Below are positions 18,566 through 48,100 of a stretch of 64,000 nt of DNA, in pieces. Every line of letters begins with the position of its first letter. The first letter of the stretch is position 1. Made by a program: the position numbers and the translations under genes. The DNA comes from Antechinus flavipes (Eukaryota): assembly GCF_016432865.1 (NCBI RefSeq), contig NC_067400.1:619380001-619444000 (forward strand), given 5' to 3'. The notes under the pieces are model-generated. The model did no database searches. It was not told the origin of the DNA and was given only the letters and a program-made list of their open reading frames with translations.

Positions 18566-19578
18566 GAATTCCAATGGGTGGGCCATCTCAGGGAATCATC
18601 CCTCCCTTTGGTAATAAAGGGGAGAAATGGGGGTCAGAACCATGGGCTCAGAGATCTCTCAGACAGGAAGGGACTTTTAGTCTGACCTCTAGTATTTTAC
18701 AGAGAAGGAAACTGAGGTCTAGAGTATGAGAGGATTAAAAGCTGGGATCCACATGCCCTATCATTGGCGCCATGTTGGGGTCAGACCAAACTGCCTCGTG
18801 GGTCTAAATGTGAAAGGCTGTGGGAATGACAATAGTTCTGGAGTTAAAAGATCCCACCTGAGTGGTGAGATCTCCTATCCTTCATCTTCTGTGGCCTCAG
18901 TTTCCCTTCCCTGTAGGGACTGGCTGAAGCTGGTTCTCCCAGTCCTTCCCCAGTCTTAATGTCTACTGCTTCCCGAGCCAGCTGCCCACTGATTTGCTCT
19001 GAGAGTCCCTCCATTGCTTTCTTTACCTGTCGGGAAACTGGGAGAAGAATCCCTGCTTTCCCGGCAAAGATGGTAGGCAGCGAGACTGAAATGAGGATGG
19101 GGCAAGGCCTCCAGAAACCCCAGATGTAAGGAGGTCCCGCACCCTCACGCAGACGGGAGCGTCTGGGGGCCGGGCAGGGGGACGAGAAGGCAGAGCCCGA
19201 GGAGAGAAGAGGGGAACAGGATCCGCAAGCGAGCGGCCGAGCTGGGAGCCGTTTCAGGCCCATCCGTCAGGGACGGGCCGCCCGGCCAAGGGCCCGGTCA
19301 GAGACGCCGGGTCAGAGACCCCGCCATCCGCCGGTGCTTCCGAGGCTACCTCCCGTAGCGTAGCCTGGGTAAGGGAGGGGACGGGGCGTTTGCTGGGCCG
19401 CTGGGGCCGGCCGCCTTTCCGCTAACCGCGTCTCCGTCCCCCCTCCCCGTCTCTCTCTCTCTCTCTCTCTCCCTCCCGCCCGTCTCAGGGCCTAGGTGGT
19501 GTGAGCGGCCTGCCCCCTACCCCAAGGAGCACACGCATCGAGACTCCCCCACTCCCCCCCACTCTCCCCAGGGGCGCA

Positions 19579-20976
19579 ATGGCGTCCAAGTCACAAGCCC
19601 CCCCGACCGAGGAGGAGAGCACCATCCTCATGGCTAAGGAAGAGCTCGAAGCTCTTCGGACGGCCTTCGAGCTGGGGGATATCCCGAAGGCTGCCTCCCG
19701 CCTCCGGGAGCTTCTGGGCTCAGCTGAGAGTAGCCGCCTCGATGTGGGCGTGACCGGCGAGTCCGGGGCCGGCAAGTCTTCCTTGATCAACGCCCTTCGA
19801 GGGATCGGGGCCGAGGATCCCGGCGCGGCTCGGACTGGCGTCATCGAGACCACAACCCAGCCCACCCCCTACCCCCACCCCCAGCTGCCTGAGCTCATGC
19901 TGTGGGACCTGCCAGGGGCCGGCTCACCCGGCTGCCCAGCCGACAAGTACCTGAAGCAGGTAGACTTTGCTCGCTACAATTTCTTCCTCCTGGTCTCACC
20001 CCGCCGCTGTGGGGCCGTGGAGACCCGGCTGGCGACCGAGATCCTCCGTCAGGGCAAGAAATTCTACTTCATCCGCACCAAGGTGGATGAGGACCTGGCG
20101 GCTTCTCGCACCCAGCGCCCCTCGGGCTACAGCGAGAGCGCTGTCTTACAGGAGATCCGAGACCACTGCGCGGAGCGCCTGCGAGCCGCCGGCGTCCAGG
20201 ACCCCCGGATCTTCCTCGTGTCCAACCTGTCGCCGGCCCGCTACGACTTCCCTCTGCTGGTGGCCACCTGGGAGCGGGAGCTGCCGGCCCACCGCCGCCA
20301 CGCCGGGCTGCTGTCCCTGCCCGACATCTCCCTCCAGGCCCTGCAGAAGAAGAAGGATGCCCTGCAGGAGCAGGTGCTGAAGACCGCGCTGGTGTCCGGG
20401 GTCATCCAGGCCTTGCCCGTGCCCGGGCTGGCGGCCGCCTACGACGACGCCCTGCTGATCCGCTCCCTGCGGGGCTACCACCGCAGCTTCGGCCTGGACG
20501 ACGACTCCCTGGCCAGGCTGGCCGAGCAGGTGGGCAAGCAGGCCGGCGACCTGCGCTCCGTGATCCGCTCGCCCCTGGCCACCGAGGTCTCGCCGGAGGC
20601 GGTGCTGCGCATGTACGCCCAATCATCGGACGGGGCCATGCGCGTGGCCCGGGCCTTCGAGAAGGGCATCCCCGTGTTCGGGACACTGGTGGCCGGGGGG
20701 ATCTCCTTCGGGACCGTCTACACCATGCTACAGGGCTGCCTTAACGAGATGGCCGAGGACGCCCAGCGTGTCCGGATCAAAGCCCTGGAAGAGGAGGTCA
20801 CCTCCCCTGGCTCCGACGCCCGCCTCGACGTCGCCAGCGGGCCCGGGTTGGAGAAGAGGGGGGCAGGCGAGGGCGGCGGGGAGGATCCTCCAATCTCAGC
20901 CCGCCGGAAGCTTGGACTGCTGCTCAAGTACATTCTGGAGAGCTGGAAAAAACGGGATGGGGTCGAAGACAAATAA
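19579..20976 (+). CDS. IRGC: Immunity-related GTPase cinema (interferon-inducible GTPase 5), intronless CDS, 465 aa
   Basis: MASKSQAPPTEEESTILMAKEELEALRTAFE...GESGAGKS...WDLPG...RTKVD...RKLGLLLKYILESWKK closely follows recalled human IRGC. Acceptor at 19487-19488; AATAAA at 20972-20977. Confidence 0.96.
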   Translation: MASKSQAPPTEEESTILMAKEELEALRTAFELGDIPKAASRLRELLGSAESSRLDVGVTGESGAGKSSLINALRGIGAEDPGAARTGVIETTTQPTPYPHPQLPELMLWDLPGAGSPGCPADKYLKQVDFARYNFFLLVSPRRCGAVETRLATEILRQGKKFYFIRTKVDEDLAASRTQRPSGYSESAVLQEIRDHCAERLRAAGVQDPRIFLVSNLSPARYDFPLLVATWERELPAHRRHAGLLSLPDISLQALQKKKDALQEQVLKTALVSGVIQALPVPGLAAAYDDALLIRSLRGYHRSFGLDDDSLARLAEQVGKQAGDLRSVIRSPLATEVSPEAVLRMYAQSSDGAMRVARAFEKGIPVFGTLVAGGISFGTVYTMLQGCLNEMAEDAQRVRIKALEEEVTSPGSDARLDVASGPGLEKRGAGEGGGEDPPISARRKLGLLLKYILESWKKRDGVEDK

Positions 20977-21520: not shown

Positions 21521-21810
21521 GGAGAGCCCATTCAAGGGCTGGTTTCACTTTCTCTGTCCCATAGACGCGTCCTTGCGGGGAAGGGGGCCACTAGGGAGAC
21601 GGGGATTCCCGGCGGGAAGCAAGTGTAAACGAGGGAAATTAGAACTGGGGAACCTGCAGAAAAGGCGTCCCTTTGGGGCGACCTCCCAACCCCCCAAAAT
21701 CTCTCCTTCTGTGGATTCCTAAGGGACCTTTGATGGCAATCCTCTGGCTCCACGCCAACACCCCCGCCCCCTCCTTCGAAGATTCCCCCTCCCCCTCCCC
21801 GAGGAGCCAA

Positions 21811-21960
21811 CCAATCAGCGTTCGTTTCTCAATACAATGGACCCTAGCAACAGGTCTGGCCGAGAAGCCAACAGAATCGGTGGGGATAAGATGCTCCAGC
21901 ACTAGAAGAGGAAGCACAAGAGGGGCCAGGGTCAAAGGAAGGCCCTGCTAAATGTGAGTT
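21811..21960 (+). promoter_or_regulatory. Candidate promoter and non-coding first exon of the second IRG gene (CCAAT, RFX X-box half-site, donor at 21954)
   Basis: CCAATCAGC at 21811, AATGGACCCTAGCAAC at 21836-21851, AAT|GTGAGTT at 21951-21960; same spacing as the module at 16567. Confidence 0.55.
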
Positions 21961-22912
21961 AGGGAGGGGGCTGATGAGGCAGAATCGCCCCCGGCCCCCA
22001 ACTCCCTGCCCCCACCCCCTTCTATACCCTTCCAGCGGGAAGTTTCAGAGGAGTTTCAGCCCCTAAAAACTCCCTAAACTCCCCCCAACTGGCCCCAGTC
22101 CAGTGTGGCTCAGCCCCGGCCCCTTTCATGCTCCATCTCTGCAAAGGGCAACTCTGGGGAAGGATTTTTTTTTTGGGGGGGGGGGGAAGGCGCATGAATC
22201 TGTGTAACGGTGGTCGGAAGGCTTTCTGAGTGACTGAGTAGTGAGGGGTCTGTGGCCTGGGCTGGGATTTGGGCCAGGTAGGAAGTTCTTGAGGATGATT
22301 GGGAGGGTAATTTAGGCTGGTGATTATTGTGACTTTGTGATGGTTACTTGGTTGGCTGAGTGAACACAGAATGAGCTTTTGGCCCGGCTTTTACTGCTCT
22401 TTTTTGGGGGGTGTGTGTGGGAGAAAAAGAGACAGAGATAAGAGACAAAGAAACAGAGACAAAGAAACAGAAACAGGGAGAGACAGAGACACAGAAAGAG
22501 ACAGAAACAGACAAATAAGAGACAGATACAAAGAAACAGACACATAGAGCGACAGAGAAAGGGAAAGTGTGAGAGAGAGTGAGAGTACCTGTGTTAAAGC
22601 ATCTCTCTCACTTCAGCCTCCTGGGGCCCCCACTCTGTTAAGCCGGGGGAGACTCACTACTTGTCCTCTTGTTGAGGACTCGGAGAAGAGCGCCAACAGT
22701 CAATAAGCAATAAGGACCGACTGTGTGTCAGCCATACAGAGGAAGGCAAAAGACAATGTCTCCTGTCAAGGAGCTTACGGTCTGAGGGAGAGCAGCACAA
22801 ACCCAGCTACGATCGAGTTAGAGACGAGTTAGAGAAACTGGAAACAAAATGCTGGTACTGGGAGGGCTCACAAAAGATTTCCTGGACAGAGGGAGATTTT
22901 AGCTGGAACTTC

Positions 22913-23095
22913 TTTTTTAATTATTATAGCGTTTTATTGACAAAACACATGCACGGGTAATTTTTCAGCATTGACCTTTGCAAAACCTTCTGTTCCAACT
23001 TTTCCCCTCCTCCCCTCCCCCCTCCAGATGGCAAGCGGTCCCATCCATGTTAAATATGTTAAAGTATATGTTAAATTATATATATATATATATCT
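22913..23095 (-). mobile_element. LINE-1 3' end fragment
   Basis: Homologous to 4133-4290 (ccagatggca...catgttaaatatgttaaagt). Confidence 0.7.
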
Positions 23096-24917
23096 TTTAG
23101 CTGGAACTTGCAGGAAGCAGACGTGAGGAGAGCAGAGGACCAGCCAGGAAGCCAGGGCCTCTCAACCGAAGGAAACAGAGATGAGGAGGCTCAGAAGAGA
23201 AAGCAGAGTGGAGGGGGAGGACAGGGAATGAGGACTTAAGAGTCTTCCAGCTTCACAGCTTTATGGGATCCATTTAGAGCTAGTTTGTTTAGAAACCTCA
23301 CTTTACAGATAAGGAAACTGAGGCTCAGAGGGAGGATCGATCACATGGAGAGGGCCATGGGATCCTAGAGCTACAGCTGGAAGGGACCTTCAAGGCCATC
23401 TAGTCATATTTGCTCACTTACAGATGAGGAAACTGAGACAGGGGGAAGTGGTTTGTCTGGTCAGTTCAGATGGCAAGCAGAAGATTTGAACCCAGGACCA
23501 CTGACAACAAATTTACCCTTTCCCACTGTCTCCTGGTAGTACATGCATTACTATCCCTATTTTACCGAGGAAACCAGCTCAGCAAGGGACGGAAAAATAA
23601 TTGTTCAAGATTAAGCACAGCTTGTGAAATTTGGAGGCAGGAAAGGTGCCCTAGGATCCAGAGCAGCCAAATCTGGACCAAACTTCCTTCCATCCGAGTT
23701 GGAAGAGACCTTAGGGGCCATTTAGGCCGATCCCTTTATTTTACAGAAGAAACCGTTACTGAAAAAAGGCGTCAGGGAACTTGCCCAAGACGGGGACTCG
23801 GGGCTCTGAGCTCTTGTAAGATCCCGTCTCTCCCGGGACGGCCCCAGGAGCACTGGGATCTAGGTGCTTCAGGCCACTCGGGCCTAGGTCCTTGACAGGG
23901 TTGGCCAGAAGCAGGGCTCCCAGTCTCAGGCAGGCAGGGCTCCAGCCCGCAGGAAGCATTAGTGCTTCAGGCAACTGAAGGGAGTGAGCTGGGGGAGGGA
24001 GAAGGTGGGGGAAGGCCCGGCTTGTTTTCCGGCCAGTTCGCCTGCCCTGGTTCCCAGGAGTCTTTCTCCCCAGTCACGTCTCTGATGCTCTCTGGAGAAG
24101 GGGGGCTTGCTGGGGGCTGGGATGTGTGTGGCAGGATGGGCCAGGAAACCCCCGCCCGTGACAGAGGTGGGGGATCCTTCTCACACTCAGGGCCTCGCTC
24201 AAGCGCATTCACACCTGGGACTCCCTGCGGGGATGCGACTCCACACTCTCACTATTAGAATCCAAGGGCAGATTATTAGAGTAATGGGCAATGTGGCAGC
24301 AGCCAAGGGCGAACTTGCCTTGGGATCGGATTTGAGCCCTGTGTTCCATACACGTCTCAAACCTGAGCAGGTTTCCGGAGCTGTTTTGCCTCCATGGAAG
24401 AGCCCCCCACACAAGGAGAGCTCTGCCCCCAGAGAGCATCATTTTGAACACAATCTGAGCTCACCCGGGTAGGAACTCCCAGTATGGGAAAGCTGTCTGC
24501 CCGAAGTGATTTGCACCATTCTTCAGGAGAGAATTACCCGAGGCCGTTTGTCCAGGGTCGCCCAGTACTGCTCACCCTGTGAGCCAATGAGTTGTTGTGA
24601 TGGATTCCACCCTGACTTAGCTCAGACACTGCCTCAGATCCTTCCCCTCATGGCGCTTCAGTCATCTCCAGGGTGTCCGCTCCCTCCCACCCCATTGGGA
24701 GTTTCTTGGGCAGAGGCTGACGTGGTCCGTCCTTCCTTTTTCCAGCTTATTTTGCAGATGAAACTAAGACAGTTAAATGACTTTCCCATCACACGGCTAC
24801 TAAGCCTCTGAAACCAGATCTGAATCCAGGTCCTCCCGACAGAGCTACCCACACGGCAGCTAGCTGCCCCATTAAGCAAACTCTCCTTTACTGACAGCCA
24901 GGATGGACCCGAGGGAC

Positions 24918-25048
24918 GCAAGGCCGGAGCTTTCTAAGCCTGAGGCCGGAGCTTTCCAAGTCCAAGTCCAAGGCCGGAGCTTTCTAAGCCTGAGGCTGGA
25001 GCTTTCCAAATCCAAGTCCAAGGCCAGAGCTTTCTAAGCCCGAGGCCA
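24918..25048 (+). repeat. Short tandem duplication (aaggccggagctttctaagcctgaggc...) x2.5
   Basis: Direct repeats with a period of about 51 nt. Confidence 0.75.
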
Positions 25049-25351
25049 GTCTTCTGTGCAAGGTACAGAGGCAGCCTCTGTACGTGGGACACAGTCATGC
25101 TCTGGCGTAGTAACGAGGTAGATGTCAGTAGATGCATTGTTTCCTCTACTGAGTATTTCCTCACATGCCTTCACCCTAAGTATTCCTTCTAAGGCCTTTT
25201 TAGCAGAACCCCCGCTCCGTTTTCAGCCAGCTGGGATGTGCCTGGGAATAAGAGACTCCGGCCCCTGAGGATCAGCCTCTACGAGCTTCCGGAGGCTCAT
25301 TACCAGATTTGCCACAGCGTGAAAATCATCCCGTGAAATGGAGGGGGTTGG

Positions 25352-25505
25352 GGGCAGCCAGGGGATGCAGTGGATGGAGCACCAGCTGTGGAAATCAGGA
25401 GGACCTGGGTTCAAATCTGACCTCAGACACTTAACACTTCCTGACTGTGACCCTGGGCAAGTCACTTAACCCCAACTGCCTCCACAAAAAATAAAATAAA
25501 ATAGA
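25352..25505 (+). mobile_element. WSINE1-like SINE
   Basis: ggggcagccagggg...gttcaaatctgacctcagacacttaacacttcctgactgtgaccctgggcaagtcacttaacccc plus A tail. Confidence 0.85.
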
Positions 25506-27168
25506 GGGGGTTACCATCTGTACTGGTGGAGACAGTCCCTACCGGGGTGGAATCACATCTCAAGGTAGTAAGGGACATCTATTATTACTATTTTTCAATA
25601 ATTCAATTCACTCCACTTCAGTTCAACTGTTTTTAAGTCCTTATTATGCATCAAGAATACAGGATGTATAAGAGGAGCCAAATCAGTTGCTTGAGAGGGA
25701 GTATATAAAATAACCCTGGAAAGACAGACTAGATTATGAAATACTTTAAAAGCCCCAATAGAGGAGTTTGGATCTTATTTCAGAGGGAGCTGGGAGCCAC
25801 AGCAGTTTCTTGAGCCAGGGGAGCAACACTCAAGATCTAGTTACTGAGGAAGTTTTGATGAAGATAGGATAGTAGGTTTTCCTTTTCCCACCCACCTCCC
25901 ACCTCCATTCAGTAAATACCAGCAGCTCCCTATTACTTCTGGGATCAAATAGAAAATCTCTGTTGGGCTTTTGGAGCCTTTCCTGTGCTGGGCCCTTCTA
26001 CCTCTCCGGTCTTTGGCCCCTCTTTGTGCCGCGTGCTGTAGAATAGAGAACCCAACAGCCCATCTCTCCTCCCCTCGGCACTGGTGGCCCCCGGGCCTGG
26101 GAGGCTCTGGGAACTAGCTCTTAGTTTCTCTGGACTCCTTCGCTCTCAGCTTGGAGCCCAGCCCCTCAAGAACACATCTCCCTGCTTTCCCTCCCCCTCC
26201 CTCCTTCTCTCCCTTCCATCCCTTTCCTTCCTTCCTCCCTTCTTTCCTTCCTGCCTTCCTTCCTCCCTCCTTAACCTCCCCCTCTCTCCCCTCTCCCTCC
26301 TTCTCTCCCTCTCTTCCCTTCCTTCCTTCCTCCCTCCTTCCTTCCCCCTCCCTCTCCTCTCCCTCCTCCTCTCCCTCCCATCTCTTTCCTTCCTTACTCC
26401 CTTCTTTCCATCCCTCCTTCCTTCCTTCTCTCCTACCCTCCTCCCTCCCTTGTGCTTACATCCCATGTTCTAAGTCCCTGCTCCCTCCCTCCCTCCCACC
26501 CTATCCTCCTTCCCGCCCTCCCTCCCTCCCTTTCTTCCTTTCAGAGGGACACAGACAGAAAAAGAGACTGACAGAAAAAAACCACACAGAGAAAGAGACA
26601 GATGAAGAGGGAGAAAGGGAGGGAGGGAGAGAGATGGAGAGATAGAGAAACACACAGACAGAGGCAGAGGCAGAGACCCGGGAGAGCGAATCCCTCTTGT
26701 CCAGAGCGCTAGAGAAGCCAGACGGTGGGTGCTGAGAAGCGACACTGAGGACAGGAAGGTTTTTCTCGAGGGTGGCTGGTTCCCAGGTGACGGTGGGGGA
26801 GCGGTGCGTGCCGGGAAGGGTGCTTTGTTTTGAAAGGATGGGGGGAGTTTGTTGTGGGGAGGGGATGAGGAGGTGATTCCACAGCGGCTCCCAGCACCTC
26901 CCCCTCCCCTCTGCCCTAGGACCACCCTCATGGGCTCACTCCAGAGAAAGTCCCTCTCCCCTTCTCCAGAGAGTCTTCCCATTTTCTTCTCTGCTCCCCT
27001 CGGCTCCCCTCACCCCCGGAGGACGTCTCAGATCCCCTGCCTCACTGGGTGCCCAGATCGTTCCCCAAGCCTCCACTTTCCCATCTACAAAATGGAGCCA
27101 ACAATGGCCCTACATACATCTCAGAACTATGTGAGGCGCTCATGAGGTCATGGCCGGGATAACTCCAC

Positions 27169-27181
27169 GGAAATGGAAACC
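27169..27181 (+). promoter_or_regulatory. ISRE-like element
   Basis: GGAAATGGAAACC fits GAAANNGAAA; 1.4 kb upstream of the second IRG ATG. Confidence 0.4.
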
Positions 27182-28083
27182 CTTATTACTGTCATTGCTT
27201 TGGTGGGAAGGATGCTGATAAGGAGAGGAAAGACTTTTGGCCTCAGGGTCCAGGGTGACCCAAGGAGGAATGACCTTGGGTAAATCACTGGTCTCAAAGC
27301 CTTAATGTCTTCATCTGTAAGATGGGACGACAGCGTCCACATTACAGCACTAGTAGGAAGATCACTGGGATTATTTTGTAACCTTGAAAGCAAAGCTCCA
27401 GGCTGGAGACTCCCTGCTGGCAGGTCTGGGTTTTCCGACCCAATTCAATGCAAGGAGCGGTGGTTAGTATGGCGTGGGGGCCTTTGGGGGGGGCTCAGCA
27501 GCCTGACGGGGCTCCCAGGAGGTGAGTGACAGAACTCGGCTGGGGGGGGACAGGTAGGGATGAGGAGGGGATGTGTGCAGTTTGTTACAGAGCCAAGTGG
27601 GCTGAAGAGAGCGAGCCAGGGAAAAATACCCTTCAGGGTGAGGAGGGAGCGGCCGCCCAGCCCGGAGTGTGGCCTCCCTCGGGTTCCCACCCTCTCCCCG
27701 ACTTGGGACCTTGCAGGGCCGGGGAATGAATGGATGAGAATGTGTTTATGGCCTCGTTCGGGGCCCGGGCGCCCGGCACAGTGTGGGAGTGCTGGTCAGA
27801 TAAGGGGCCTGGCCCAGGGAAGGACTCGGTGCCGGTGGGGGGGGTCCCCCTAGGTCAGAGTGGACGTAAGGCCCAGGGTGAGAACGTGGAGCCCCAGAGT
27901 CCGCCCTAGGCGGGTTAGAGGTCCTGCACCACTCAGGCGCACATTAGGACAGGAAACCATGAGTCAGGATTTAGAAGCCGGAGATTGGAGGTTGTCCCAG
28001 TCTATCGTGTTAGAGCTGCAAAGGACAGAGGATGGGGAATGTTGAGTTGGAGGGGCCTTAGAATAATGTCAGATTGGGGGGAC

Positions 28084-28390
28084 CTAGAATATGGAATATC
28101 AGAGTGGGGAGGGGAAACCTAGAACATGGGATGTAGATCTAAGTGGGAATCTAGAACATATGATATAGGCTCAAGAGGGAACCTAGAACATGGGGTGCAG
28201 ACCAATACGGGGATCTTGAACATGGGATGTGGACCTGAGCAGGGACTTAGAACATGGGATGTAAGCACAAGGGGAATCTAGAAGAGATGAGTGGAGATGG
28301 GACTTAGAACATGGGGTATAGACCTGAGCAGGGACTTAGAACATGGGGTATAAGCGTAAGGGAACTGCACAAGGGGAACCTGGAACACGG
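28084..28390 (+). repeat. Degenerate 32-nt tandem repeat (ctagaacatggg core), about 9 copies
   Basis: AGAACA cores at 28121, 28153, 28185, 28249, 28306 and 28338. Confidence 0.75.
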
Positions 28391-28550
28391 GGTCGGAGCG
28401 GGCCCTCGCTGGGCCTCTGCCCGCTGCAGACCCGGAGGGGGGAGGAGGCTTTCCGGGAGCCCCTCCCAGCAGGGAGGCGCTGACGGCCGCCCCCTCCTTG
28501 CCCCGAAGGTCACCATCCTCCCCACGTTGACACCTCCATCTTTCCCCTCG

Positions 28551-31500
28551 ATGGCTGCCCCGAAGACCCAGGAGTCTAAGACCACCCTGACTCTGAGCCC
28601 GGAGAAGATGGCGTCCATCGGAGAGGTCTTCCAGGGAGACAGCCTGTCCGCCACCTCCACCAAGCTGCGCTCCACCCTCCAGTCCCTGGAGAACGTGCGG
28701 CTGGACATCGCCGTCACGGGCGGGGCGGGCTCGGGCAGGTCCACCTTCGTCAACTCGCTGCGGGGCCTGGGCGACGAGGACCAGGGCTCGGCGCAGACCG
28801 GGCTGGCCGAGACCACGTCGGCCCCGACGCCGTACCCGCACCCCAAGTACCCCAACGTCATCGTCTGGGAGCTGCCCGACTTGGGGACGTCCTCCCTGCC
28901 AGCCGAGCAGTACCTGGAGAAGGTCCTGATGGGCCGCTACGATCTCTTCATCCTGCTCAGCGCGGAGCGCTTCAGCCCCGGCCACGCGCGGCTCGCGCGC
29001 GCCCTCCAGGCCCGGGACAAGCCCTGCTACCTGGTCCGCTCCAAGGTGGACGTGGACGTGGCCGCCTCCCGCCAGCGCCGACCCAGCACCTTCTCTGAGG
29101 AAGGCGTGCTCATGGACATCCGGGAAAACTGCCGTTCCTACCTGCAAGGTGAGGCCCGGGGGCGCGGGGAGGAACGTGAGGGCCGGGGACGCGGGGAGCG
29201 ATGTAGGGGGGGGAGGCGCGTGAGGGGCCGGAGACGTGGGGAGGAACGTGAGAATCCGGGGGGCGCGTGAGGGGCCGGAGACGTGGGGAGGAACGTGAGA
29301 ATCCGGGGGCGCGTGAGGGGCCGGAGACGTGGGGAGGAAAGTGAGGGCCGGGGACGCGGGGAGGAAAGTGAGAGCCCGGGGGCGCGTGAGGGGCCGGAGA
29401 CGTGGGGAGGAAAGTGAGAGCCCGGGGGCGCGTGAGGGGCCGGGGCCGCGGGGAGGAACGTGAGGGCCCGAGGGCGCGGGGAGCGATGTAGGGGGCGGAG
29501 GCGCGTGAGGGGCCAGAGACTCGGGGAGGAAAGTGAGGGCCGGGGACGCGGGAAGGAAAGTGAGAGCCCGGGGGCGCGTGAGGACCCGGGAACACTTGAG
29601 AGGCCCGGGAGCCGGAGAGCGACGTGAGGGCCCCAAGATCATGATCCCAAAGCTGGGAGGGGCAGCTCCCCAACCTTTGCCTTCCGTGGTCACTCATAGA
29701 GCCAGGGGAGCCCACAAGCACTCAGGACTGAGGCGGACCCGGTAGAAACCTCCCTGCAGATTCAGTGACAGATGGGCATGTAACCCGCACCTGGAACCTC
29801 TAGAGACAGGGAACTCACTACCTTCATATCCTAATATCAAATGGGTCCCCAAAGGGTCTGAACAGGAAGTCCTGCAACCTCAGTGACAAACGCTCAGCTT
29901 TAAGGTCTCGGAGTCTCCCCAGGAAGGATGTGGGTATCCTCAGTGTCCCAGAATAGGAAATCTCAAACCTGGAGCTCCCCAGGGGGCTATTAGCTTGGTT
30001 CATACATGAACAGCACTTCTCCCTGCCCTCAGCTTAGGCAGGTCATTCTTTTTCTCTGGAACTCAATTTCCTCATCTGGAAAAAAAGGACATTGAACTAA
30101 AAAGCCCCAAAGGGACCCCCGATGGAAACCTTTACTCCTGTACTCCCAGAAAAACAAATGATGATCTAGCCTCTGCTTGAAGACTCACGGTGATAGGGAG
30201 CTCACTACTTGCACTCACTCACTTACTTTTTTTCTCTTTTTGCTGGGGCAATTGGGGTTAAGTGACTTGCCCAGGGTCACAGAGCTGGGAAGTGTTAAGT
30301 GTCTGATATTTGAACTCGGCTCCCCTTGACTTCAGGGCTGGTGCTCTATCCACTGAGTCATCTAGCTTTCCTGAAGGGAGCCCCTTTCACTTTTGAAGAT
30401 CTCGACAGGATACATCTCTGTGTTGAGTCCACTCTTTATGTCTTCCATTCACTGACTCAGCTACAGGTGAGGGAAAGGAAAAAAAGTCTTCAAAGGATCA
30501 TGGGTTCATCCCTTTGAAGCTGGAAGGGACTGGTCTCCTCATTGTACAGATAGAGAAACAGGTCTCCACAGGGCAAGAGATCTCATTTCTTGAGATCTTA
30601 CGTAAAACAGCCAACATTGACATGCTGCTTAAAGCAAGACTCACAACACGTTTTAGAAATATTTGGGGACAGCTAGGTGGTGCAGTGGGTAGAGCACCAG
30701 CCCCGGAGTCAGGAGCACCTGAGTTCAAATCTGGTCCCAAGCACTTAGCACGTCCTAGCTGTGTGACCCTGGGCAAGTCACTTAACTCCAATTGCCTCAG
30801 GAAAAAAAATCATTTTATTCATATGCCAACCCTGGGACGAAGGTGCTGCTATTATTCCCATCTTGGAGATGGGCCGGGAGTGGGAAATTTTCCAGGGCGC
30901 TCTGATTAGTCGAAAATGCTTCCTTGTACCACTAGGAAGTGGCCTGGGTTTGCGCATTGTGTCTCCCACGGAGGGGTATGTGTTCCACGAGCCCCCACAG
31001 GTGTGTTTACTTTGTAAAAGCAGCCGGCGAGGCCACGGGTCCAAAGCAAAGTCATTTGATGAGGTCACATGGTAAGGAAAGTCCCCACGGACCCGGATCA
31101 GGCTCCCACAAGTTGCATCCGCAGTCGGGGGAGGGGGAGGGAGAAGATGCACTTGTGAAGGGGCACACGCAGACAATACGAGTGTGGCCGAGACCCGCTC
31201 TTCCCAGGGCACCAATATGTGCTCCTGTAGCTAGGCAACACATGGAGCAGGGTACCAGTGACAAGATGCTTTGCTCGCTAGCGGCCTCTTGTGGCCGACC
31301 TGTGGCCAGCACCGGCTGCTCGGGGGCAGGTAGGGCCACGGGAATTGTGGGAGTTTCTCTCACTTGCCAATTTCTGGCCTCAGTTGGAATCCTTAGTTGG
31401 GGGAGAACTTTTTTTTCTTCCTGGGAAAAAAGTTGACAATTGTCCTGCTGCAGTTTACTAGAAAGTAGATGTCCTGGGTGACCCTGGGAAAGTCACAACC

Positions 31501-33779
31501 CCAGTTGCCTCAGCCAAAAAAAGAAAAAAAAATAATAGATGTCCTTGCGTAAGACTTGCATAACCTCTTCTTGAGAAAAGCCCTTCCCATTTCTCAGAAT
31601 CTTCTGAGATCCTTCAGATGTGGTCACGTCATCCGGGATACAGAAATGGGTCCGTCGCAGCCAGCTTTCTGTCCTCAGCTTTCTTTCTGGTGGTGTTTTT
31701 TTACTTAGTGATCGCTGAGTCCCGTATCTCTGTTCCTTCATGTTTCGGGTCAGCAAATCCCGCACTAAGCTGTATTTCAGCCAACGATTGCTATAGAAGC
31801 TGCCCCCCACTTGCCAAGGCTTTGTACCCTTTACGTTTAAGTGCCCCGGAAAAAGCCCCTTCTCCCTGCCTTAGTTGCAGCTCTGATCAGAAGCCTTGAC
31901 AGGAAGGGGCAATAATTTGGAAAAAGCCCCCTTCACTCCACCTTAGGTACAGCTCTGATCAGAAGCCTTGACAGGAAGGGGCAATAATTTGGAAAAAGCC
32001 CCCTTCACTCCACCTTAGGTACAGCTCTGATCAGAAGCCTTGACAGGAAGGGGAAACAACAACTTGCTAAAGAGCGCTGGTTTTTTATTTTTATTTTTTA
32101 TTGTCTGGAAGTGGTTCAGACCTGGGATTTCATCAGCGCAGGGGCTTCCTGTGTAGAAACTTCCTCTGGAGAGACCAGTGGTTAGCTCCCCCTTCATGCT
32201 CAGCCTTAGGGGGTTTCACGGGGCAGGTGGGAGCGGGAGAGCGGGTTCTGTTCTGTGCACGTCTTCAATTATGGACAAGGTGCTCTCGGAACACGGCAGG
32301 TGGGATGGAGGCCCAGCTTTCAGGGCGTTCTCAGCCCTCCGGAGACAGCTCCACTGGGCAGAGGTTTGTGGGCCGTCCGGGACGAGGAAGCACTCAGTTA
32401 CCGAGGGCACGGGGCTGAATTTGAACTCGGGACCCTAGCTTACAGAGTGGAGCGATGGTTCTGTCTGCACCTGAGGCAGAACGGGGAGCCGAAGGGCGGA
32501 GAGGTGGATTTCAGCTTCATGCTGGGGGGGAGGAGGCCGGATTCCAAGTTGGAGGTCCTGGGTTCTAGTCCTGCTCCACCACGTGACTAAATCACACACG
32601 TTCTGCTGGTCAGTTTCCTTCTCAGCCACAGGAGGGGGTCGTTGCCTCGGAGTGTTTTCCACTTTTAGATCCAGGATCCTGATAATAGCTCTCCAGATGT
32701 AGATGTCTGGTCAGGGGGTGAGTTCCCCACCGTGGGAGGTATCCAAGCCAGGTGATCGCTCCTTTCCGATTCTGGGTTTGTGCACAGTCAGGGGCCTCCC
32801 AATCCCTCCTGCTCCAGGATTTAGTGATTCAGAGAAGGAAAGCAGGTAGTGAGTGTCCCGTCTTGGGAGGTGGATGGAGGCCCCACTCAGGAATGGGTTA
32901 CCTTGGATACCTCCCCTCCCCGAAGTTCCCGCCGGGACTCTGATTCTGTCCCCCAGAATTTGAGGACTCCTGACTCTCAAATCGGGGTGCGGTGAGAGAG
33001 CAGCCCCCGGCCCAGAGCATCCTGGGAGGCCCCCCAGGACGGGGAGGGGGGGGCTTTGCCCGAGCTCCGGCCGAGGGGCCCCCGGGCTGAGCCTCCAGGA
33101 GGCGGCCGGGGGCGCCCAGGAGCCGGGGCCCGGGCAGACGCGGGGACCCTTGTCTTCCTCAGCGGAGGGGGTCACCAAGCCCAAGGTCTTCCTGCTGTCC
33201 ACGTTCGAGCTGGACAAGTTCGACTTCCAGCTGCTCAGCGAGGTCATAGTGAGGGACCTGGAGAGCTCCAAGCGCCACGCCTTCCTGCTGGCCCTGCCCA
33301 ACGTGTCCAACGCCGTCCTGGAGAAGAAGGCGGGCTCCATGCTCCAGCACATCTGGCTCGTGGCCACCGTGGCCTGCACCGTGAACCCGCTGCCGGTGCC
33401 CGGGGTGCCCGAGGTGGCCTGCGACCTGGGGCTGCTGGTGCGGGCCCTGTCCGGCTACCGCCGCGGCCTGGGGCTGGAGGCGGGCGGCCTGCAGCGGCTG
33501 GCCCAGCGCACGGGCGGCTCCCTGCAGGCCATGCAGAGCCGGGTGTGCGGGCCGCTGTGCGAGGCCAGCCCGCGGCAGGTGATCGACTTCCTGGGCCGCG
33601 CCTGCGGGAGCACCACGGCCACCTTCGCGCAGGAGCTGGCATCCCTGCCCGTGCTGGGCGTGCTGTCGTCCTGCAGCTTCTCCTTCGCCACCGTGTACCA
33701 GATGCTCCGCGCCTACCTGGACAAGGCCACGGCGGAGGCCAAGAAAACCCTGAGCCAGGCCTTGCCCACGGGCCAGTGA
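28551..33779 (+). CDS. Second, divergent immunity-related GTPase (IRG/p47 family), two coding exons, 404 aa, non-canonical G1 and G3
   Basis: Exon A 28551-29148 (CAA G|GTGAGG) joins exon B 33163-33779 (ttcctcAG|CG) in phase 1; 1215 nt open. IRG hallmarks: LENVRLDIAVTG, TPYPHPKYPNV, RYDLFILLS, RSKVD, PKVFLLS, FLLALPN..LEKK, PLPVPG, SFATVYQML. Confidence 0.9.
29149..29625 (+). repeat. GC-rich minisatellite (gtgagggccggggacgcggggaggaa-type units) starting at the IRG2 donor site
   Basis: Tandem units visible; accounts for the repetitive antisense ORFs. Confidence 0.85.
30225..30372 (-). mobile_element. WSINE1-like SINE
   Basis: Reverse complement of the SINE consensus (ggggttaagtgacttgcccagggtcacagagctggg...tttgaactc). 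Confidence 0.8.
30665..30810 (+). mobile_element. WSINE1-like SINE, near full length
   Basis: ggggacagctaggtggtgcagtgggtagagcaccagccccggagtcaggagcacctgagttcaaatc...gcctcaggaaaaaaaa. Confidence 0.88.
31076..31086 (-). promoter_or_regulatory. Canonical NF-kB site in the IRG2 intron
   Basis: GGAAAGTCCCC = GGGGACTTTCC on the minus strand (Ig-kappa/HIV kB sequence). Confidence 0.5.
31878..32052 (+). repeat. 72-nt direct tandem duplication x2.4
   Basis: cagctctgatcagaagccttgacagg at 31878, 31950 and 32022. Confidence 0.9.
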
Positions 33780-34359
33780 GCCGGGCGGCGGCCGGGAACC
33801 CCCCGCCCTGCGGCCAAGTGGGAGTGGGCCGGGCGGGTCGGGAGGACCAAGAAACTCTCACCTCCAGAAAGCCGCTGTGTGGTTCTTTGTGTCCTGGCGC
33901 CCGGCGGCTGCCCCGGCCAGCAAACATTCATCCCCGGCTGCGGACGGGACCTTGGGCAACAGCGCTCGGAGGGCCCCGAGCCCGGGGGGAGACAGTAACC
34001 CGGCTTCTCTTTCTGAGCAAGCTTTCCCCGGGCCGGGGGCTCCCTGCCTCCCTTACACGGTCTCAGGGGCACGTGGAGCTCGGGGGCCGGGAACAAGGCT
34101 CGAATCCTGGGCCTTCCTGCCCCGGGGACTGTCCCCCGCCCCAGGGTCTCCCGGGGAGACATCGCTCTGTTGTTCTTGGCTGCCAAAGGCCGGGGCCCAC
34201 GCTCTCTCCTTCAGTCGTCTCCACCCTGGGGTTCGCCCTCGTAGAGCAAGGGGTCCCAAGAGGGAGTGGGAGCCCAACCCTTCCCTGAGTGAGCCCTCCT
34301 GGCAAAGCATCATTGCACCCCTGCTTGGGACCTCCCACGGGGGCACTCACCGGCTTTAG

Positions 34360-44765: not shown

Positions 44766-45185
44766 AACCAACAAATCGGACCCAGAAGAGGCGCCCTCGA
44801 GGACAGGGGCATCCCCGGCCCCGGCTCTCAGAGGGACCACCCGGGGAGGACGGGAGCTCCGAGCTCCCCACTTGTCTGGCTGTGTGGCCCGAGAACGGGG
44901 GGCTGGGAGAGGGGCCCCGCTTCTCGCTGGGTCTTGAAATCGATCACCTTCCTCCCTCAATCTGTGGGGATGGATGAGCCCCAGGCTCTGACCCCCGAGA
45001 ACCTTCCGCTGGCCCTGGGACGTCCGAGCAGCTGAATCCCCCCGCTGGCTCTCCCGCCGCTGCTGTCTGCGCCCCCGAGGGGCCTGGTGTGTGCGTACTC
45101 ACACACGGCAGCTGGAGGTGGGGAAAGGGACCCCCGGTCCTCCGGGAACTTAGCAAGCCCTGCGCGCCGCCCTCCTCGCACACCC

Positions 45186-48100
45186 TCACGCCAGCAGGCG
45201 GCTGTACTCAGCCAGCGCGGAGGACTTCTTGACCCCGTCCCAGATCCGGGCGGCGTAGTGGAACCTAGGCCAAGGGGAGGGCGGGCGTCAGAGAGCGGGC
45301 CGGGGAGCGCCGTCGGAGAACTCTGGGACCTCCCTGAGACCTCTCCGGGATCTCCCCGGGACCTCCGGGCCCTCACTGGGACCTCCGGGCCATCCCCGAG
45401 ACTTCCAGAACCTCACTGAGGCCCCAGTATCTCAGACCGCTCAGGACCACCGGAGCTGCCTCTTCTTTGAAATGGGCCGAGACACCCCCCCCCCCCCCCA
45501 GCTCACATGTCCTGGGTTCCTGAGCTTTGCCAAGGGTGGAAGGTGAGCCCCTTGCCCACCGGCCCCCCCTTTCCTGCGCCCCGCCCCCTCCCCCGGCCGT
45601 ACCAGTTCTTCTCCGTGAGGATGGTGTGCGAGAGCTGCGGCCGGGCCATGGACATCACCTGGCTCCGGAGTTTGGTCACTAAGGACTGGAAGCTGGGGTG
45701 GCCCCGGTAGCCCGGGAGAAGGGAAAAGAGCGGGCTGGAGCCTGGGCCTGGGGATCGAGGGACAGGGTGAGAACCTCGGCCCGGTGCCTTTGCCCTCCCC
45801 CGGGTGCCCGCCCCCACCCGGGCCCCCCGGCTGGTACCTGCCCGGGGCAGGCTCTCGCTGTCCCCCTCGGTGTCCATGAAGGGCACCAGGAAGAGGTTCA
45901 CCTCCGAGTCCAGGAAGTCGGGGGGCAGGCCCGGGAAGACGTTGCACTGCAGCATGGACAGGGTGCCTGGTGAAGGGGAGAGGGCCGAGGTGAGAGTGAG
46001 GCGGGGAGGCGGCCTCGGGGCGGGCCCGGGGGCGGCCCCTTACCCTTGTAGCGCAGGTGGGAGTGGGCCATCAGCTGGTCGATCACCAGGTGCATCTGCC
46101 GCAGCTTCTGGGGGCAGAAGTCCTCCCGCCGGGCCTTGTTCTGCAGGAAGACTGAGGGGGGGTGGCGGGTGAGCCCCGGGCTGGGCAGGAGCAGCCCCCC
46201 CACCCCCCGGGAGCGGCGCCTCACCCAGGTGGGGGTAGTACTCCGTGCCTTCGTCCGAGCCGGAGGAGCTGCTGGCCTCGTGGCTGGGGGAGGGGGTGGA
46301 GGGCTTCACCATCTCGGCCGTCTGCAGGAACCTGGGCGGGAGGCACGGGGAGGCTCGCTGCCTTGCCTGTGGCCCCCCCCAAGCAAGACCCACCTGCAGG
46401 AAGCCCCCCCAGTGTCTGTGGACCCCCTTGCTCCGCCCACTCCAACACCGTCTCCCCAAACCCCATTTTTCAGAGGAGCCCCTGGAGGCTCTGGGTCTTC
46501 TTGACCGTGACCTCCGGCCTCCATGGCCCATGTTTGCCCCCAGGAGCACAGACAGAAGCACCCGAGTCAGGATTCGAATCTGTGCCCCGAGCCCAGGCCC
46601 CGGGGTCCCCCCGCCCGCTCACCGGTACAGACTGAGGTCAGTGAACCAGTCCTGCACCACGATGACCACGTGGCAGACGGTGAAGAGGAAGGCCGCGATC
46701 TGCAGGGACTGGACAGGAGAGACGTCACTCAGGGGGCCACGGCCCCCCCTTCTCCCCCCTCCCCCCTGCTTGCCCCCCGAGCCCTCACCTGCATCTCCAC
46801 GTAGGTGTGGGGGAGGTTGTACTCGGGGGGCAGTTTGCGGTCATTGTTGATGAGGTGGTCCAGGATGGACGGGCTCAGGATGGGCTGAGGGAGGAGGGAA
46901 GGGGCGTCAGGGCCGAGACTGGGGGAGCACCGCCGGCAGGTGAGGACTTGGCGGCCCCAGCCAAGCTCGGCATACAGTGGGCGCTTAATGATGCCTCGGG
47001 CCCGTGACCGCCCCCTGCTGGCCTGCAGAGCCCGGCCCACCTGGGTGTCCAGGAAGACGATGCGCTCCTGGGTGATGAAGAAGTCGATGCCGCTGGTCTG
47101 GTTCCCCCCGCGCTCCTTCATCTCGGCGCTCTGGGCCCGGAACACGTAGGCTCTGGGGGGGCAGCGCGGGTTCCTCCCGTCAGACTCCGCGCCCCCTCCC
47201 GAGGGCCGGGGGCTGTTCAGGGGCCCTCGGGGGGCCCGGCCCGGGGGAGCAGCCTCGGAGGCCGGCCCCTCGTCTGAAATGGGGGTGACAGCGTGTGCTG
47301 CGGGGGATCGGGGGGCGCTGGGTCAGCCTCCGGGTGCCGTGGGGATGAGCCGGCTGGGCTCCCTCTGGTGGGGGAAAAGCTGGGGGTGCTAGTGGACCCC
47401 CAGCTCCCGATGAGCACAGGCCTCCCTGGGCTCCTCTCACGCTACCTCGGGCAGACGTCACGGGCGGGGGTGAGGGGTCTCGGCTCTTCCTGACCCTGAG
47501 ACACGGCCTGCCGTGGAGCCAGTGCAGGGGGTCTCGGGAGGTGACCGTCCCCCCTCCCCCCTCCCCCCCAGGGACTAACCACAGAGGGGGGTCAGGGCCC
47601 CGCCCTTCCACTGACTCAAGCAGCGGTTATTAAATGCCTACTGTGTGCCCAGCCCTGTGACTGGCCCGAGACACCTCCAGCTTAGCTCACCCTGGCCTGA
47701 CTAAGTGTGCGCTGGGCCACAGGGGGCGGGGCACGGGAAAAGCCCCCCCAGGACCACAGGGCCCGGGCCGGGCCGGGATCAGGGCTGCTTCTGGGAGGAG
47801 GCTTGGCCTTCGCCCCCGGGGTAACACGCCGGCGTTTCACTTCCGGGAGCTGGCCCCCCAGGGGACAGCTCTCCCCATTTCACAGCTGAGGACGCTGAGG
47901 CTCCGGCTGGGTGAGAGCCGTGACCCCCGATTGCCCGCGTGGGGAGGCGGGATCTCTGTGACGGGGACCTCGTGGGCAGCAGTGGGGGGCAGAGGAGGAG
48001 CCGGGCCCGGGCCCCGCCTACCTCTGGTCCTCCTCGGGGGTGTTGGCCGACAGCAGGGACATGACCATTGACTTGCCCGTTCCTTGCAGACCCAGGACCC

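What the first reader, a model, noticed from the sequence alone, without database searches (positions are those of the whole stretch)
28551..33779. Second intact IRG gene in tandem with IRGC, absent from the human block
Sequence: a 404-aa spliced ORF with no stops or frameshifts, CpG-rich coding-like codon usage, and all IRG regions (N-terminal helices, G domain, C-terminal helical domain), but clearly diverged from the neighbouring IRGC. Known: humans have only IRGC, IRGM and IRGQ, and IRG expansions mediate cell-autonomous resistance to vacuolar pathogens such as Toxoplasma and Chlamydia in rodents. Inference: an uncharacterised marsupial IRG lineage.
Basis: partly seen in the sequence, partly recalled or inferred. 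Interest (0 to 1): 0.88.

Follow-up and report, generated by a model that had tools for sequence, protein, structure and literature searches.

The report
Ancient IRGC paralogue, intact in dasyurids
Next to the sperm gene IRGC, this marsupial (yellow-footed antechinus) carries an intact, selectively maintained second IRG GTPase gene; it is not a marsupial invention but an old amniote paralogue also kept by platypus, cats, cattle and bats, not annotated in primates or rodents, and altered at its GTP-binding motifs in dasyurids.

Summary
Exons 28551-29148 and 33163-33779 (+), joined GT/AG in phase 1, encode a 404-aa IRG protein. It matches Pfam IIGP end to end, and its AlphaFold model matches Irga6 at TM 0.76.

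The window is Antechinus flavipes. The protein is identical to RefSeq XP_051845524.1, "interferon-inducible GTPase 5-like", so the gene is already auto-annotated. I found no paper that characterises it.

A careful tree puts it in a strongly supported clade with the middle platypus gene, seven other marsupials and ten Laurasiatherians. A turtle and alligator clade is sister to it, and IRGC comes next. In the cat the orthologue also sits between IRGC and the same minus-strand gene, with the intron at the same codon and phase. No primate, rodent, afrotherian or xenarthran protein turned up.

Devil, dunnart and antechinus all keep 404 codons without indels. Their dN/dS is 0.22-0.31 (p below 1e-4).

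All three dasyurids have a GSGRS P-loop, where Arg replaces Irga6 Lys82, and WELPD in place of WDLPG. The most likely reading is a constrained, hydrolysis-impaired IRG.

The parts
28551..29148 (+). IRG2 coding exon 1: N-terminal helices and G domain, residues 1-199 plus the first base of codon 200
   Evidence: Pfam IIGP positions 1-184, E 5e-60. 43% identical to IRGC. The donor is CAAG|GTGAGG.
28719..28742 (+). G1/P-loop GGAGSGRS. The Arg63 codon AGG is at 28737-28739 and aligns with Irga6 Lys82.
   Evidence: Translation. Alignment to Irga6 chain 1tq6 with an offset of +19. The codon is AGG in all three dasyurids but AAG in Dromiciops and cat. Among 406 G1 motifs found in the 426 fetched IRG proteins, 391 are GKS and 6 are GRS. 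Of the six GRS, three are the dasyurid orthologues, one is a fragment 92-93% identical to them (species not identified), one is the sea-lion orthologue and one is an unnamed protein.
28797..28817 (+). Switch I, TGLAETT. Glu87 aligns with Irga6 Glu106.
   Evidence: This Glu is replaced by Gly in devil and dunnart.
28866..28880 (+). G3 region WELPD, in place of the family's WDLPG (DxxG)
   Evidence: WDLPG occurs 401 times among the fetched relatives. WELPD occurs only in the three dasyurids.
29037..29051 (+). G4 motif RSKVD (guanine specificity), retained
29149..33162 (+). Intron of 4014 nt, GT...AG, phase 1, at the end of the G-domain helix that spans residues 183-200. It begins with a GTGAGG-bearing minisatellite at 29144-29590.
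   Evidence: Same position and phase in devil, dunnart, Dromiciops and cat. The helix end comes from the model.
33163..33779 (+). IRG2 coding exon 2: end of the G domain, C-terminal helical domain, and stop
   Evidence: Pfam IIGP positions 187-374, E 3e-19. 34% identical to IRGC. RNA-type contig sets hold 0.94-1.00 (organism C) and 0.50 (organism A) of its words.
19576..20976 (+). IRGC, the intronless tandem neighbour 7.6 kb upstream
   Evidence: Pfam IIGP E 1.6e-92. 97% identical to wombat IRGC and 81-85% to placental IRGC. It falls in the IRGC clade at 100/100 support.
45157..46860 (-). Exons of the conserved downstream minus-strand gene, probably SMG9. This is the synteny anchor.
   Evidence: tblastn of translated ORFs from the gene downstream of cat IRG2-like and of the gecko IRG gives up to 100% identity per exon. 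The gene order Kcnn4-Smg9-Irgc is stated in preprint 10.64898/2026.10.14.758906. Pfam gave no family for the short pieces.

Best explanation
**Shown.**
- This is the Antechinus flavipes orthologue of an old paralogue of IRGC. RefSeq calls it 'interferon-inducible GTPase 5-like'; I call it IRG2 here.
- The gene lies between IRGC and the SMG9-like gene.
- It arose before the monotreme-therian split, and probably in early amniotes.
- Monotremes, marsupials and Laurasiatherian placentals still have it. No protein of this clade was found for primates, rodents, Afrotheria or Xenarthra.
- It encodes a full-length IRG fold.
- It has been kept intact under purifying selection in Dasyuridae.
- Its exons are present in RNA-type assemblies.

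**Inferred.**
- In dasyurids the P-loop lysine is Arg, the DxxG motif is ExxD, and the catalytic switch-I Glu is dispensable (lost in devil and dunnart). The guanine-specificity motif SKVD, the P-loop glycines and the P-loop Ser are retained.
- The protein therefore most likely still binds guanine nucleotide but no longer carries out the cooperative GTP hydrolysis of GKS effector IRGs.
- On that reading it works as a non-catalytic or slow-cycling scaffold or regulator. The comparison is with GMS regulators or the quasi-GTPase IRGQ, not with a vacuole-disrupting effector.
- Its tissue and its partners are unknown.
For: **Gene and fold.**. The AlphaFold model has mean pLDDT 84.6 and pTM 0.83. 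It matches full-length Irga6, Irgb6, Irgb10 and GM4951 at TM 0.66-0.79.

**Identity.** The protein is 100% identical to XP_051845524.1.

**Orthology by tree.** In the careful trees the clade of platypus 418-aa gene, 8 marsupials and 10 Laurasiatherians has 100/99 support. Its sister is a turtle plus alligator clade at 97/88 and 95/87. IRGC is the next relative out. Rodent IRGA/IRGB-type proteins sit outside on a 100/100 branch.

**Orthology by synteny.** The order is IRGC, IRG2, then a 520-aa minus-strand gene in cat. In platypus a third IRG gene (452 aa) also lies before that 520-aa gene. IRGC lies upstream of IRG2 in devil, dunnart, Dromiciops and Petaurus.

**Intron.** It has an identical position and phase in cat, Dromiciops and the dasyurids.

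**Selection.**
- dN/dS is 0.22-0.31 among the three dasyurids, with Fisher p from 4e-5 to 1e-7.
- dN/dS is 0.27 against Dromiciops.
- There are no indels across 1215 nt.
- The exons are 97.4% identical between antechinus and devil, against 82-87% for the long aligned blocks of the upstream intergenic DNA.

**Motifs.**

**Transcription.**
- Organism-A RNA contig sets hold 0.50 of the exon-2 words and 0.10-0.11 of the 5.5-kb stretch.
- Those values match what devil RNA carrying both exons would give: 0.53 and 0.108-0.112.
- Two small contig sets of organism C hold 1.00 and 0.94 of exon 2.
Against:
- The run identities and tissues are coded, so 'organism A is the devil' is an inference from k-mer shares.
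- The observed share (0.11) cannot statistically exclude intron-containing RNA, which would give 0.134.
- No biochemical data exist. An Arg in a P-loop can still support nucleotide binding, and in some NTPases slow hydrolysis.
- Antechinus itself keeps the switch-I Glu.
- The absence from Euarchontoglires, Afrotheria and Xenarthra rests on protein databases, not on genome searches.
- IRGD, IRGM and IRGQ were not placed in the tree.
Confidence: 0.68

Rival explanations
1. The gene is an interferon-inducible, catalytically active IRG effector that contributes to cell-autonomous resistance against vacuolar pathogens such as Toxoplasma and Chlamydia in marsupials.
For: It is a full-length member of the IRG family by Pfam and by fold. 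It evolves about 10-40 times faster than IRGC at non-synonymous sites. RNA contig sets from at least 4 studies of organism A hold it, which argues against strict restriction to one tissue. The true promoter was not located, so interferon elements could lie further upstream.
Against: - Its closest relative is IRGC, which is not interferon-inducible and is testis-expressed (PMC1297648).
- Rodent IRGA/IRGB-type proteins are separated from it by a 100/100 branch.
- It is single-copy in every genome looked at, and dN/dS is well below 1.
- There is no GAAANNGAAA core within 1.3 kb upstream of the ATG, and no TTCNNNGAA motif between 17107 and 31591. The nearest ISRE-like core, at 27170, sits between MIR-like repeats and is not conserved in the dunnart.
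- Arg replaces the lysine that aligns with Irga6 Lys82. From my own recollection of Hunn 2008, which was listed but not read here, the Irga6 K82A mutant is hydrolysis-deficient and dominant negative.
- DxxG is replaced by ExxD.
Confidence: 0.12
2. The gene has a germ-line or sperm-specific structural role like its neighbour IRGC, a subfunctionalised tandem duplicate. The GTPase chemistry would be secondary to a scaffolding role in the flagellum.
For: - It is one of IRGC's closest relatives in the tree and its immediate tandem neighbour in the genome.
- Neither gene has ISRE or GAS elements nearby (PMC1297648).
- The placental orthologues look degraded in pinnipeds: GLGKS with no G4 motif in grey seal, GSGRS with no G3 motif in sea lion, GSGKL in Weddell seal. 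In whales the models are marked 'LOW QUALITY' or truncated.
- That pattern echoes the IRGC pseudogenisation reported for Cetacea in preprint 10.64898/2026.10.14.758906.
Against: - No tissue information could be obtained.
- RNA-type contig sets from many samples and studies hold the exons, which would be unusual for a testis-only transcript.
- It is far less constrained than IRGC (dN/dS 0.2-0.3 against 0-0.04).
- It lacks IRGC's C-terminal extension.
Confidence: 0.15
3. The gene is a recently disabled or non-functional copy: open by chance, with dead GTPase motifs, and transcribed only as noise.
For: The P-loop Lys, the G3 Asp and Gly, and (in devil and dunnart) the catalytic Glu are all altered. 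The dasyurid stem branch is long, 0.31 against 0.11-0.14 for the tips of most other australidelphian orthologues (the bilby tip is 0.42).
Against: - All 404 codons are intact with no indel in three genera that share the same motif changes, so the changes are old and the frame was kept afterwards.
- pN is significantly below pS in all three pairs (p 4e-5 to 1e-7).
- Both exons have similar dN/dS.
- The splice sites are conserved from Dromiciops to cat.
Confidence: 0.04

Closest known systems
[quoted passage not shown]
   Same: Same family and fold. It is the tandem neighbour on the same strand, and in the tree it is the next lineage out from IRG2 and its turtle/alligator sister clade. Neither gene has a proximal ISRE or GAS element.
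   Different: - IRGC is only 43% (G domain) and 34% (helical domain) identical to IRG2.
- IRGC is intronless in its coding region, has a C-terminal extension of about 60 aa, and has canonical GESGAGKS and WDLPG motifs.
- IRGC is under extreme constraint (dN/dS 0-0.04), where IRG2 is at 0.2-0.3.
- IRGC is present in all mammals sampled, including primates and rodents.
Laurasiatherian, monotreme and other marsupial genes auto-annotated as 'interferon-inducible GTPase 5-like' (for example cat XP model P0022 and platypus P0005). This probably includes the partial dog sequence 'most closely related to IRGC' in Bekpen 2005.
   Same: They are orthologues of IRG2: same clade at 100/99 support, same position between IRGC and the 520-aa minus-strand gene, and in therians the same intron site and phase.
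   Different: - Most placental and monotreme members keep GSGKS, TGVVE(T/M)T and WDLPG, so they look like working GTPases.
- The dasyurid proteins have GSGRS and WELPD.
- The platypus gene has no intron.
GMS subfamily (IRGM / Irgm1-3), regulators with Met in place of the P-loop Lys
   Same: These are IRG proteins with a non-Lys residue at the P-loop position. By their published role they act as regulators rather than effectors. This is an analogy for how a GRS protein might work.
   Different: IRG2 has Arg, not Met. It sits in a different part of the tree (the IRGC side), has no known GKS partners, and its regulatory function is untested.
IRGQ (FKSG27), the quasi-GTPase linked to IRGC in human and mouse (PMC1297648)
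   Same: It is IRG-related, linked to IRGC on the same chromosome segment, and has degenerate GTP-binding motifs.
   Different: - According to Bekpen 2005, IRGQ lacks conserved GTP-binding motifs altogether.
- From my own knowledge rather than a test here, IRGQ is much longer (about 580-620 aa).
- IRG2 keeps G4 and most of G1, and its placental orthologues have all the motifs.
- One bat fragment of the IRG2 clade is labelled 'family Q protein-like' by NCBI (P0080). By its sequence this looks like a naming slip.
- No IRGQ sequence was available to place in the tree.
Fish irgf genes (one intron 'at the end of helix 4 of the G-domain', PMC1297648)
   Same: A sardine relative has a phase-1 intron at almost the same place, 3 codons upstream of the therian site.
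   Different: The fish genes are outgroups to all the amniote genes in the tree. Every intervening lineage that was checked is intronless: gecko, turtle, all three platypus genes, and IRGC. Homology of the introns is therefore doubtful.

Membership tests
IRG / p47 GTPase family (Pfam IIGP, PF05049) | Sequence match to the IIGP profile over the G domain and the helical domains | tested here: met
   Exon 1 matches profile positions 1-184 (204 bits). Exon 2 matches positions 187-374 (69.7 bits). The cut-off is 24 bits.
IRG / p47 GTPase family (Pfam IIGP, PF05049) | Three-part fold: N-terminal helices, Ras-like G domain, C-terminal helical domain, as in Irga6 | tested here: met
   The model has pLDDT 84.6 and pTM 0.83. 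Foldseek against 1tq4 gives TM 0.76/0.78 over 403 columns. All 38 top hits are IRG structures.
GKS subclass of IRGs | P-loop GxxxxGKS | tested here: not met
   The motif is GGAGSGRS. Arg63 aligns with Irga6 Lys82.
GKS subclass of IRGs | G3 DxxG and the catalytic switch-I Glu (Irga6 Glu106) | tested here: not met
   G3 is ELPD. The Glu is present in antechinus but is Gly in devil and dunnart.
GMS subclass of IRGs (IRGM) | P-loop GxxxxGMS | tested here: not met
   The residue is Arg, not Met. No IRGM sequence was included in the trees.
IRGC orthologue group | Falls inside the IRGC clade, with an intronless coding exon and a C-terminal extension | tested here: not met
   It falls in a separate clade with 100/99 support. 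The IRGC clade has 100/100 support and contains the window's own IRGC. IRG2 has a coding intron and no extension.
'IRGC-like' (IRG2) orthologue group of mammals | Monophyly with the platypus, marsupial and Laurasiatherian genes, and a position between IRGC and the SMG9-like gene | tested here: met
   Trees. Synteny. Shared intron.
Interferon-inducible IRG effectors (IRGA/IRGB/IRGD type) | Orthology to the IFN-inducible clusters | tested here: not met
   Guinea-pig IFGGB1, Peromyscus IRGB10-like and Chinchilla IIGP1-like proteins are separated by a 100/100 branch. Identity to Irga6, Irgb6 and Irgb10 structures is 27-31%. IRGD was not sampled.
Interferon-inducible IRG effectors (IRGA/IRGB/IRGD type) | ISRE/GAS elements in the promoter and induction by interferon | tested here: inconclusive
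   There is no ISRE core within 1.3 kb of the ATG, and no GAS motif between 17107 and 31591. The transcription start is unknown, and induction cannot be tested with these tools.
IRGQ quasi-GTPase | Orthology to IRGQ, with loss of all GTP-binding motifs | not tested
   No IRGQ sequence was retrieved. Indirect evidence is against it: placental orthologues of IRG2 have complete motifs, and the gene lies on the SMG9 side of IRGC.

The most novel reading that the evidence does not exclude
Two readings are not excluded by the evidence.

1. Dasyurid IRG2 could define a third functional P-loop class of IRG proteins, 'GRS' with ExxD. The state has been fixed since before the three dasyurid genera split (tens of millions of years, from my own knowledge) and is held under purifying selection. 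It would work as a nucleotide-locked regulator or scaffold, parallel to the GMS regulators.

2. Its coding intron is found only in therian orthologues. It is absent from platypus, turtle and gecko genes and from IRGC. It could therefore be a true intron gain on the therian stem, which is a very rare event in mammals.
Probability: 0.3. Interest if true: 0.65.

Novelty: new member of a known kind. Interest (0 to 1): 0.45.

Why it matters
The textbook picture of mammalian IRGs has the interferon-inducible GKS and GMS clusters plus the lone, conserved testis gene IRGC.

This locus shows that IRGC has an old sister gene at its side that the literature has all but ignored. Monotremes, marsupials and Laurasiatheria keep it, and no protein of the clade was found for the two lineages in which IRGs have mostly been studied, human and mouse.

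That makes cattle, pig, cat, bats and marsupials the only systems in which its function can be examined. It also gives a natural series running from canonical GTPase (placentals, platypus), through loss of the G3 glycine (Dromiciops, glider, wallaby), to GRS/ExxD (dasyurids). That series could be used to ask what an IRG does once hydrolysis is lost.

It does not by itself show a new immune mechanism in marsupials.

Tried and rejected
1. **Read-level check of junction 29148|33163.** Exon 2 alone went to the look-up of sequencing runs. One local k-mer count in run_python covered 28400-33900.

2. **Looking for a transcript contig that encodes the whole 404-aa protein.** Only genome assemblies carry it.

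3. **Exhaustive representative search.** It returned mostly unnamed tandem IRG proteins. Two rounds of naming gave lungfish, bichir, mollusc and cnidarian proteins first. The rodent IRGA/IRGB-type outgroups came only in the second round.

4. **Naming the downstream gene by Pfam from single exons.** No hit. It is called SMG9-like from synteny only.

5. **Homologous promoter module shared by IRGC and IRG2.** The repeat finder over 16000-29200 found only low-complexity and tandem arrays in common. I did not test the CCAAT/RFX motifs themselves.

6. **The conserved upstream block 26900-27340 as a promoter with an ISRE.** It looks like MIR-type repeat sequence, and the ISRE-like core is not conserved. 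Rejected.

7. **Strong acceleration of dN on the dasyurid lineage.** A three-taxon estimate gives only about 1.4-fold against Dromiciops, so I make no claim of positive selection.

8. **Wallaby, glider and opossum DNA for a branch model.** It was not on record or the files were too large.

Full report
**What is there.** On the + strand, an ATG at 28551 opens a 598-nt exon that ends CAAG|GTGAGG at 29148. After a 4014-nt intron, the acceptor CTTCCTCAG|CGGAGG at 33163 opens a 617-nt exon that ends with TGA at 33779. The join is in phase 1 and gives 404 codons without a stop. The exons match Pfam IIGP positions 1-184 (E 5e-60) and 187-374 (E 3e-19), so they are two contiguous halves of one IRG protein. 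The intronless gene at 19576-20976 is IRGC. It is 97% identical to wombat IRGC and 81-85% to placental IRGC. It is only 43% and 34% identical to the two exons of the new gene.

**Source and existing annotation.** The best database match was a 404-aa Tasmanian devil protein with the same junction. Its 90% cluster also holds 404-aa proteins of Sminthopsis crassicaudata and Antechinus flavipes. The Antechinus protein (XP_051845524.1, 'interferon-inducible GTPase 5-like') is 100% identical to the window's product. Its genomic locus matches the window over 25,229 of 25,229 bases. The window is therefore A. flavipes assembly GCA_016432865.2, and the gene model already exists in RefSeq. I found no paper that describes this gene. 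The nearest mention is in Bekpen et al. [quoted passage not shown]

**It is not a marsupial lineage: database hits.** Searches with exon 1 and with the cat orthologue returned proteins of the same type from several groups:
- other marsupials: Petaurus, Notamacropus, Macrotis, Dromiciops, Gracilinanus;
- platypus;
- many Laurasiatherians: carnivores, artiodactyls including whales, bats, mole, shrew, rhinoceros.

No primate, rodent, lagomorph, afrotherian or xenarthran protein appeared.

**It is not a marsupial lineage: trees.** I built careful maximum-likelihood trees of 57 and 61 proteins.
- One clade holds the platypus 418-aa gene, eight marsupials and ten Laurasiatherians, with 100/99 support and the species-tree order inside it.
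- Its sister is a turtle plus alligator clade (97/88 and 95/87).
- The mammal-only IRGC clade comes next (100/100, stem length 0.76), then a monotreme-specific third gene.
- Squamate, amphibian and fish genes lie outside these.
- Rodent IRGB- and IRGA-type proteins (guinea-pig IFGGB1, Peromyscus IRGB10-like, Chinchilla IIGP1-like; named) are cut off by a 100/100 branch.

**It is not a marsupial lineage: synteny.**
- In the cat the order is IRGC (464 aa), the orthologue (415 aa), then a 520-aa minus-strand gene.
- In platypus it is a 481-aa IRGC, the 418-aa gene, a 452-aa gene, then the 520-aa minus-strand gene.
- In devil, dunnart, Dromiciops and Petaurus, IRGC lies 6-9 kb upstream of the gene.
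- Exons of the cat and gecko downstream gene match window 45157-46860 on the minus strand. By the published order Kcnn4-Smg9-Irgc this should be SMG9.

Even so, 'marsupial lineage' is wrong.

**The intron.**
- The intron is at the same codon and in phase 1 in antechinus, devil, dunnart, Dromiciops (8 kb) and cat (604 nt).
- It falls at the end of the modelled G-domain helix 183-200. That is the place Bekpen 2005 describes for fish irgf genes.
- The platypus orthologue, the turtle sister gene, the syntenic gecko gene, IRGC and the third monotreme gene are all intronless.
- A sardine relative has a phase-1 intron three codons upstream.
- On the tree, one gain on the therian stem is more parsimonious than five or more losses. 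With this sampling I leave the question open.

**Is it functional?**
- Devil, dunnart and antechinus each have exactly 1215 nt with no indel.
- Pairwise dN/dS is 0.22-0.31. pN is below pS with Fisher p of 4e-5, 1e-7 and 9e-7. dN/dS against Dromiciops is 0.27.
- Both exons show similar values.
- The exons are 97.4% identical between antechinus and devil, while the long aligned blocks of the upstream intergenic DNA are 82-87% identical.
- IRGC in the same genomes has dN/dS of 0-0.04, so IRG2 is constrained but much less so.

**Transcription.** RNA-type contig sets of 'organism A' from at least four studies hold 0.50 of the exon-2 words and 0.10-0.11 of the words of the 5.5-kb stretch. I computed what devil sequence would give: 0.53 for exon 2, 0.108-0.112 for both exons, 0.057 for exon 2 alone, and 0.134 for the whole locus with its intron. 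The data fit devil RNA that carries both exons. Two small contig sets of organism C, the best DNA holder and so probably the window's species, hold 1.00 and 0.94 of exon 2. I worked beside those places afterwards.

**The GTPase motifs.** Alignment to Irga6 (offset +19) puts Arg63 on Lys82 and Glu87 on the catalytic Glu106. Across the family the motifs GxxxxGKS, TGVVETT, WDLPG and (S/T)KxD are nearly invariant. In the marsupial orthologues they change step by step:

| Lineage | Motif state |
|---|---|
| Gracilinanus | WDMPG |
| Dromiciops | G3 glycine lost; switch-I Glu is Gln |
| Petaurus, wallaby | WDLPS |
| Bilby | WELPN |
| All three dasyurids | WELPD, plus GSGRS (codon AGG where others have AAG) |
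| Devil, dunnart | additionally, Gly replaces the switch-I Glu |

G4 (RSKVD), the P-loop glycines and the P-loop Ser remain. Most Laurasiatherian orthologues are fully canonical. Pinnipeds and whales show scattered damage, including an independent GSGRS in the sea lion. The AlphaFold model (pLDDT 84.6, pTM 0.83) superposes on full-length Irga6, Irgb6, Irgb10 and GM4951 (TM 0.66-0.79).

**How it most likely works.**
- Shown: a constrained, full-length IRG fold with a non-canonical nucleotide site.
- Inferred: retention of G4 and of the P-loop scaffold suggests that guanine nucleotide is still bound. Loss of the Lys, of DxxG, and in two genera of the catalytic Glu suggests that the cooperative hydrolysis cycle of GKS effectors is gone.
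- On that reading the dasyurid protein acts as a scaffold or regulator, by analogy with GMS proteins or IRGQ.

Nothing supports the vacuole-resistance role specifically:
- the gene is single-copy;
- it is under purifying selection;
- IRGC is its closest mammalian relative;
- there is no ISRE core within 1.3 kb of the ATG, and no GAS motif between 17107 and 31591;
- the only nearby ISRE-like core sits among MIR-like repeats and is not conserved.

The transcription start was not found. The 300 bp before the ATG are a 32-bp tandem repeat, so regulation remains open.

**Verdict.** The interpretation needs correcting: this is the dasyurid member of an ancient, literature-neglected IRGC paralogue that is already auto-annotated. 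It is retained outside Euarchontoglires, and its GTP-binding motifs are specifically degenerate in dasyurids. Interest is moderate. It is a new member of a known kind, with two open threads that would raise it: a GRS pseudo-GTPase class, and a possible intron gain on the therian stem.

Noticed in passing
window 29144-29590: The intron opens with a minisatellite (units of about 27, 46 and 73 nt) whose unit begins GTGAGG. The real donor is therefore the first of a dozen or so donor-like copies. The 27-nt unit would keep the reading frame if a downstream copy were used. The unspliced frame stays open to 29270.
   Followed up: partly
window 28119-28370: A 32-bp tandem repeat (CTAGAACATGGGATGTAGACC...) fills the 300 bp just upstream of the start codon. 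There is a polypyrimidine-AG site about 40 nt before the ATG, so the promoter and a 5' non-coding exon probably lie further upstream.
   Followed up: no
L004 (platypus) 3982-5427, 10001-11257, 18032-19390: Platypus has three intronless IRG genes in tandem before the 520-aa minus-strand gene: IRGC (481 aa), the IRG2 orthologue (418 aa), and a third, fast-evolving monotreme-only gene (452 aa; echidna has a 450-aa counterpart) on a stem of length 0.75.
   Followed up: partly
proteins P0041, P0056, P0044, P0373, P0396 (placental orthologues): The orthologues in pinnipeds and whales carry damaged motifs or are flagged low quality or truncated. The sea lion has an independent GSGRS. This suggests decay of the gene in marine mammals, parallel to the IRGC loss reported for Cetacea.
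   Followed up: partly
window 19576-20976 versus L001 and L003: IRGC is almost frozen among dasyurids: 0-1 amino-acid changes in 465 codons, dN/dS 0-0.03. Its dS (0.03-0.07) is about half that of the neighbouring IRG2 (0.06-0.14).
   Followed up: no
window 26900-27340: The only upstream block conserved as far as Dromiciops contains two CATCTGTAAAATGGG-type cores typical of MIR SINEs. It is not a promoter-like element.
   Followed up: partly
L006 (gecko) and L009 (turtle): The gecko has a single intronless IRG between a 324-aa minus-strand gene and the 510-aa SMG9-like gene. The turtle IRG2-like gene is intronless and lies next to an Ig-domain (CADM4-like?) gene. Carettochelys has at least five IRG genes on the same 16.7-Mb scaffold.
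   Followed up: no
They were left alone afterwards.
   Followed up: no
window 10675-11013, 62679-62974, 63002-63609: Runs of N (assembly gaps or masked sequence).
   Followed up: no
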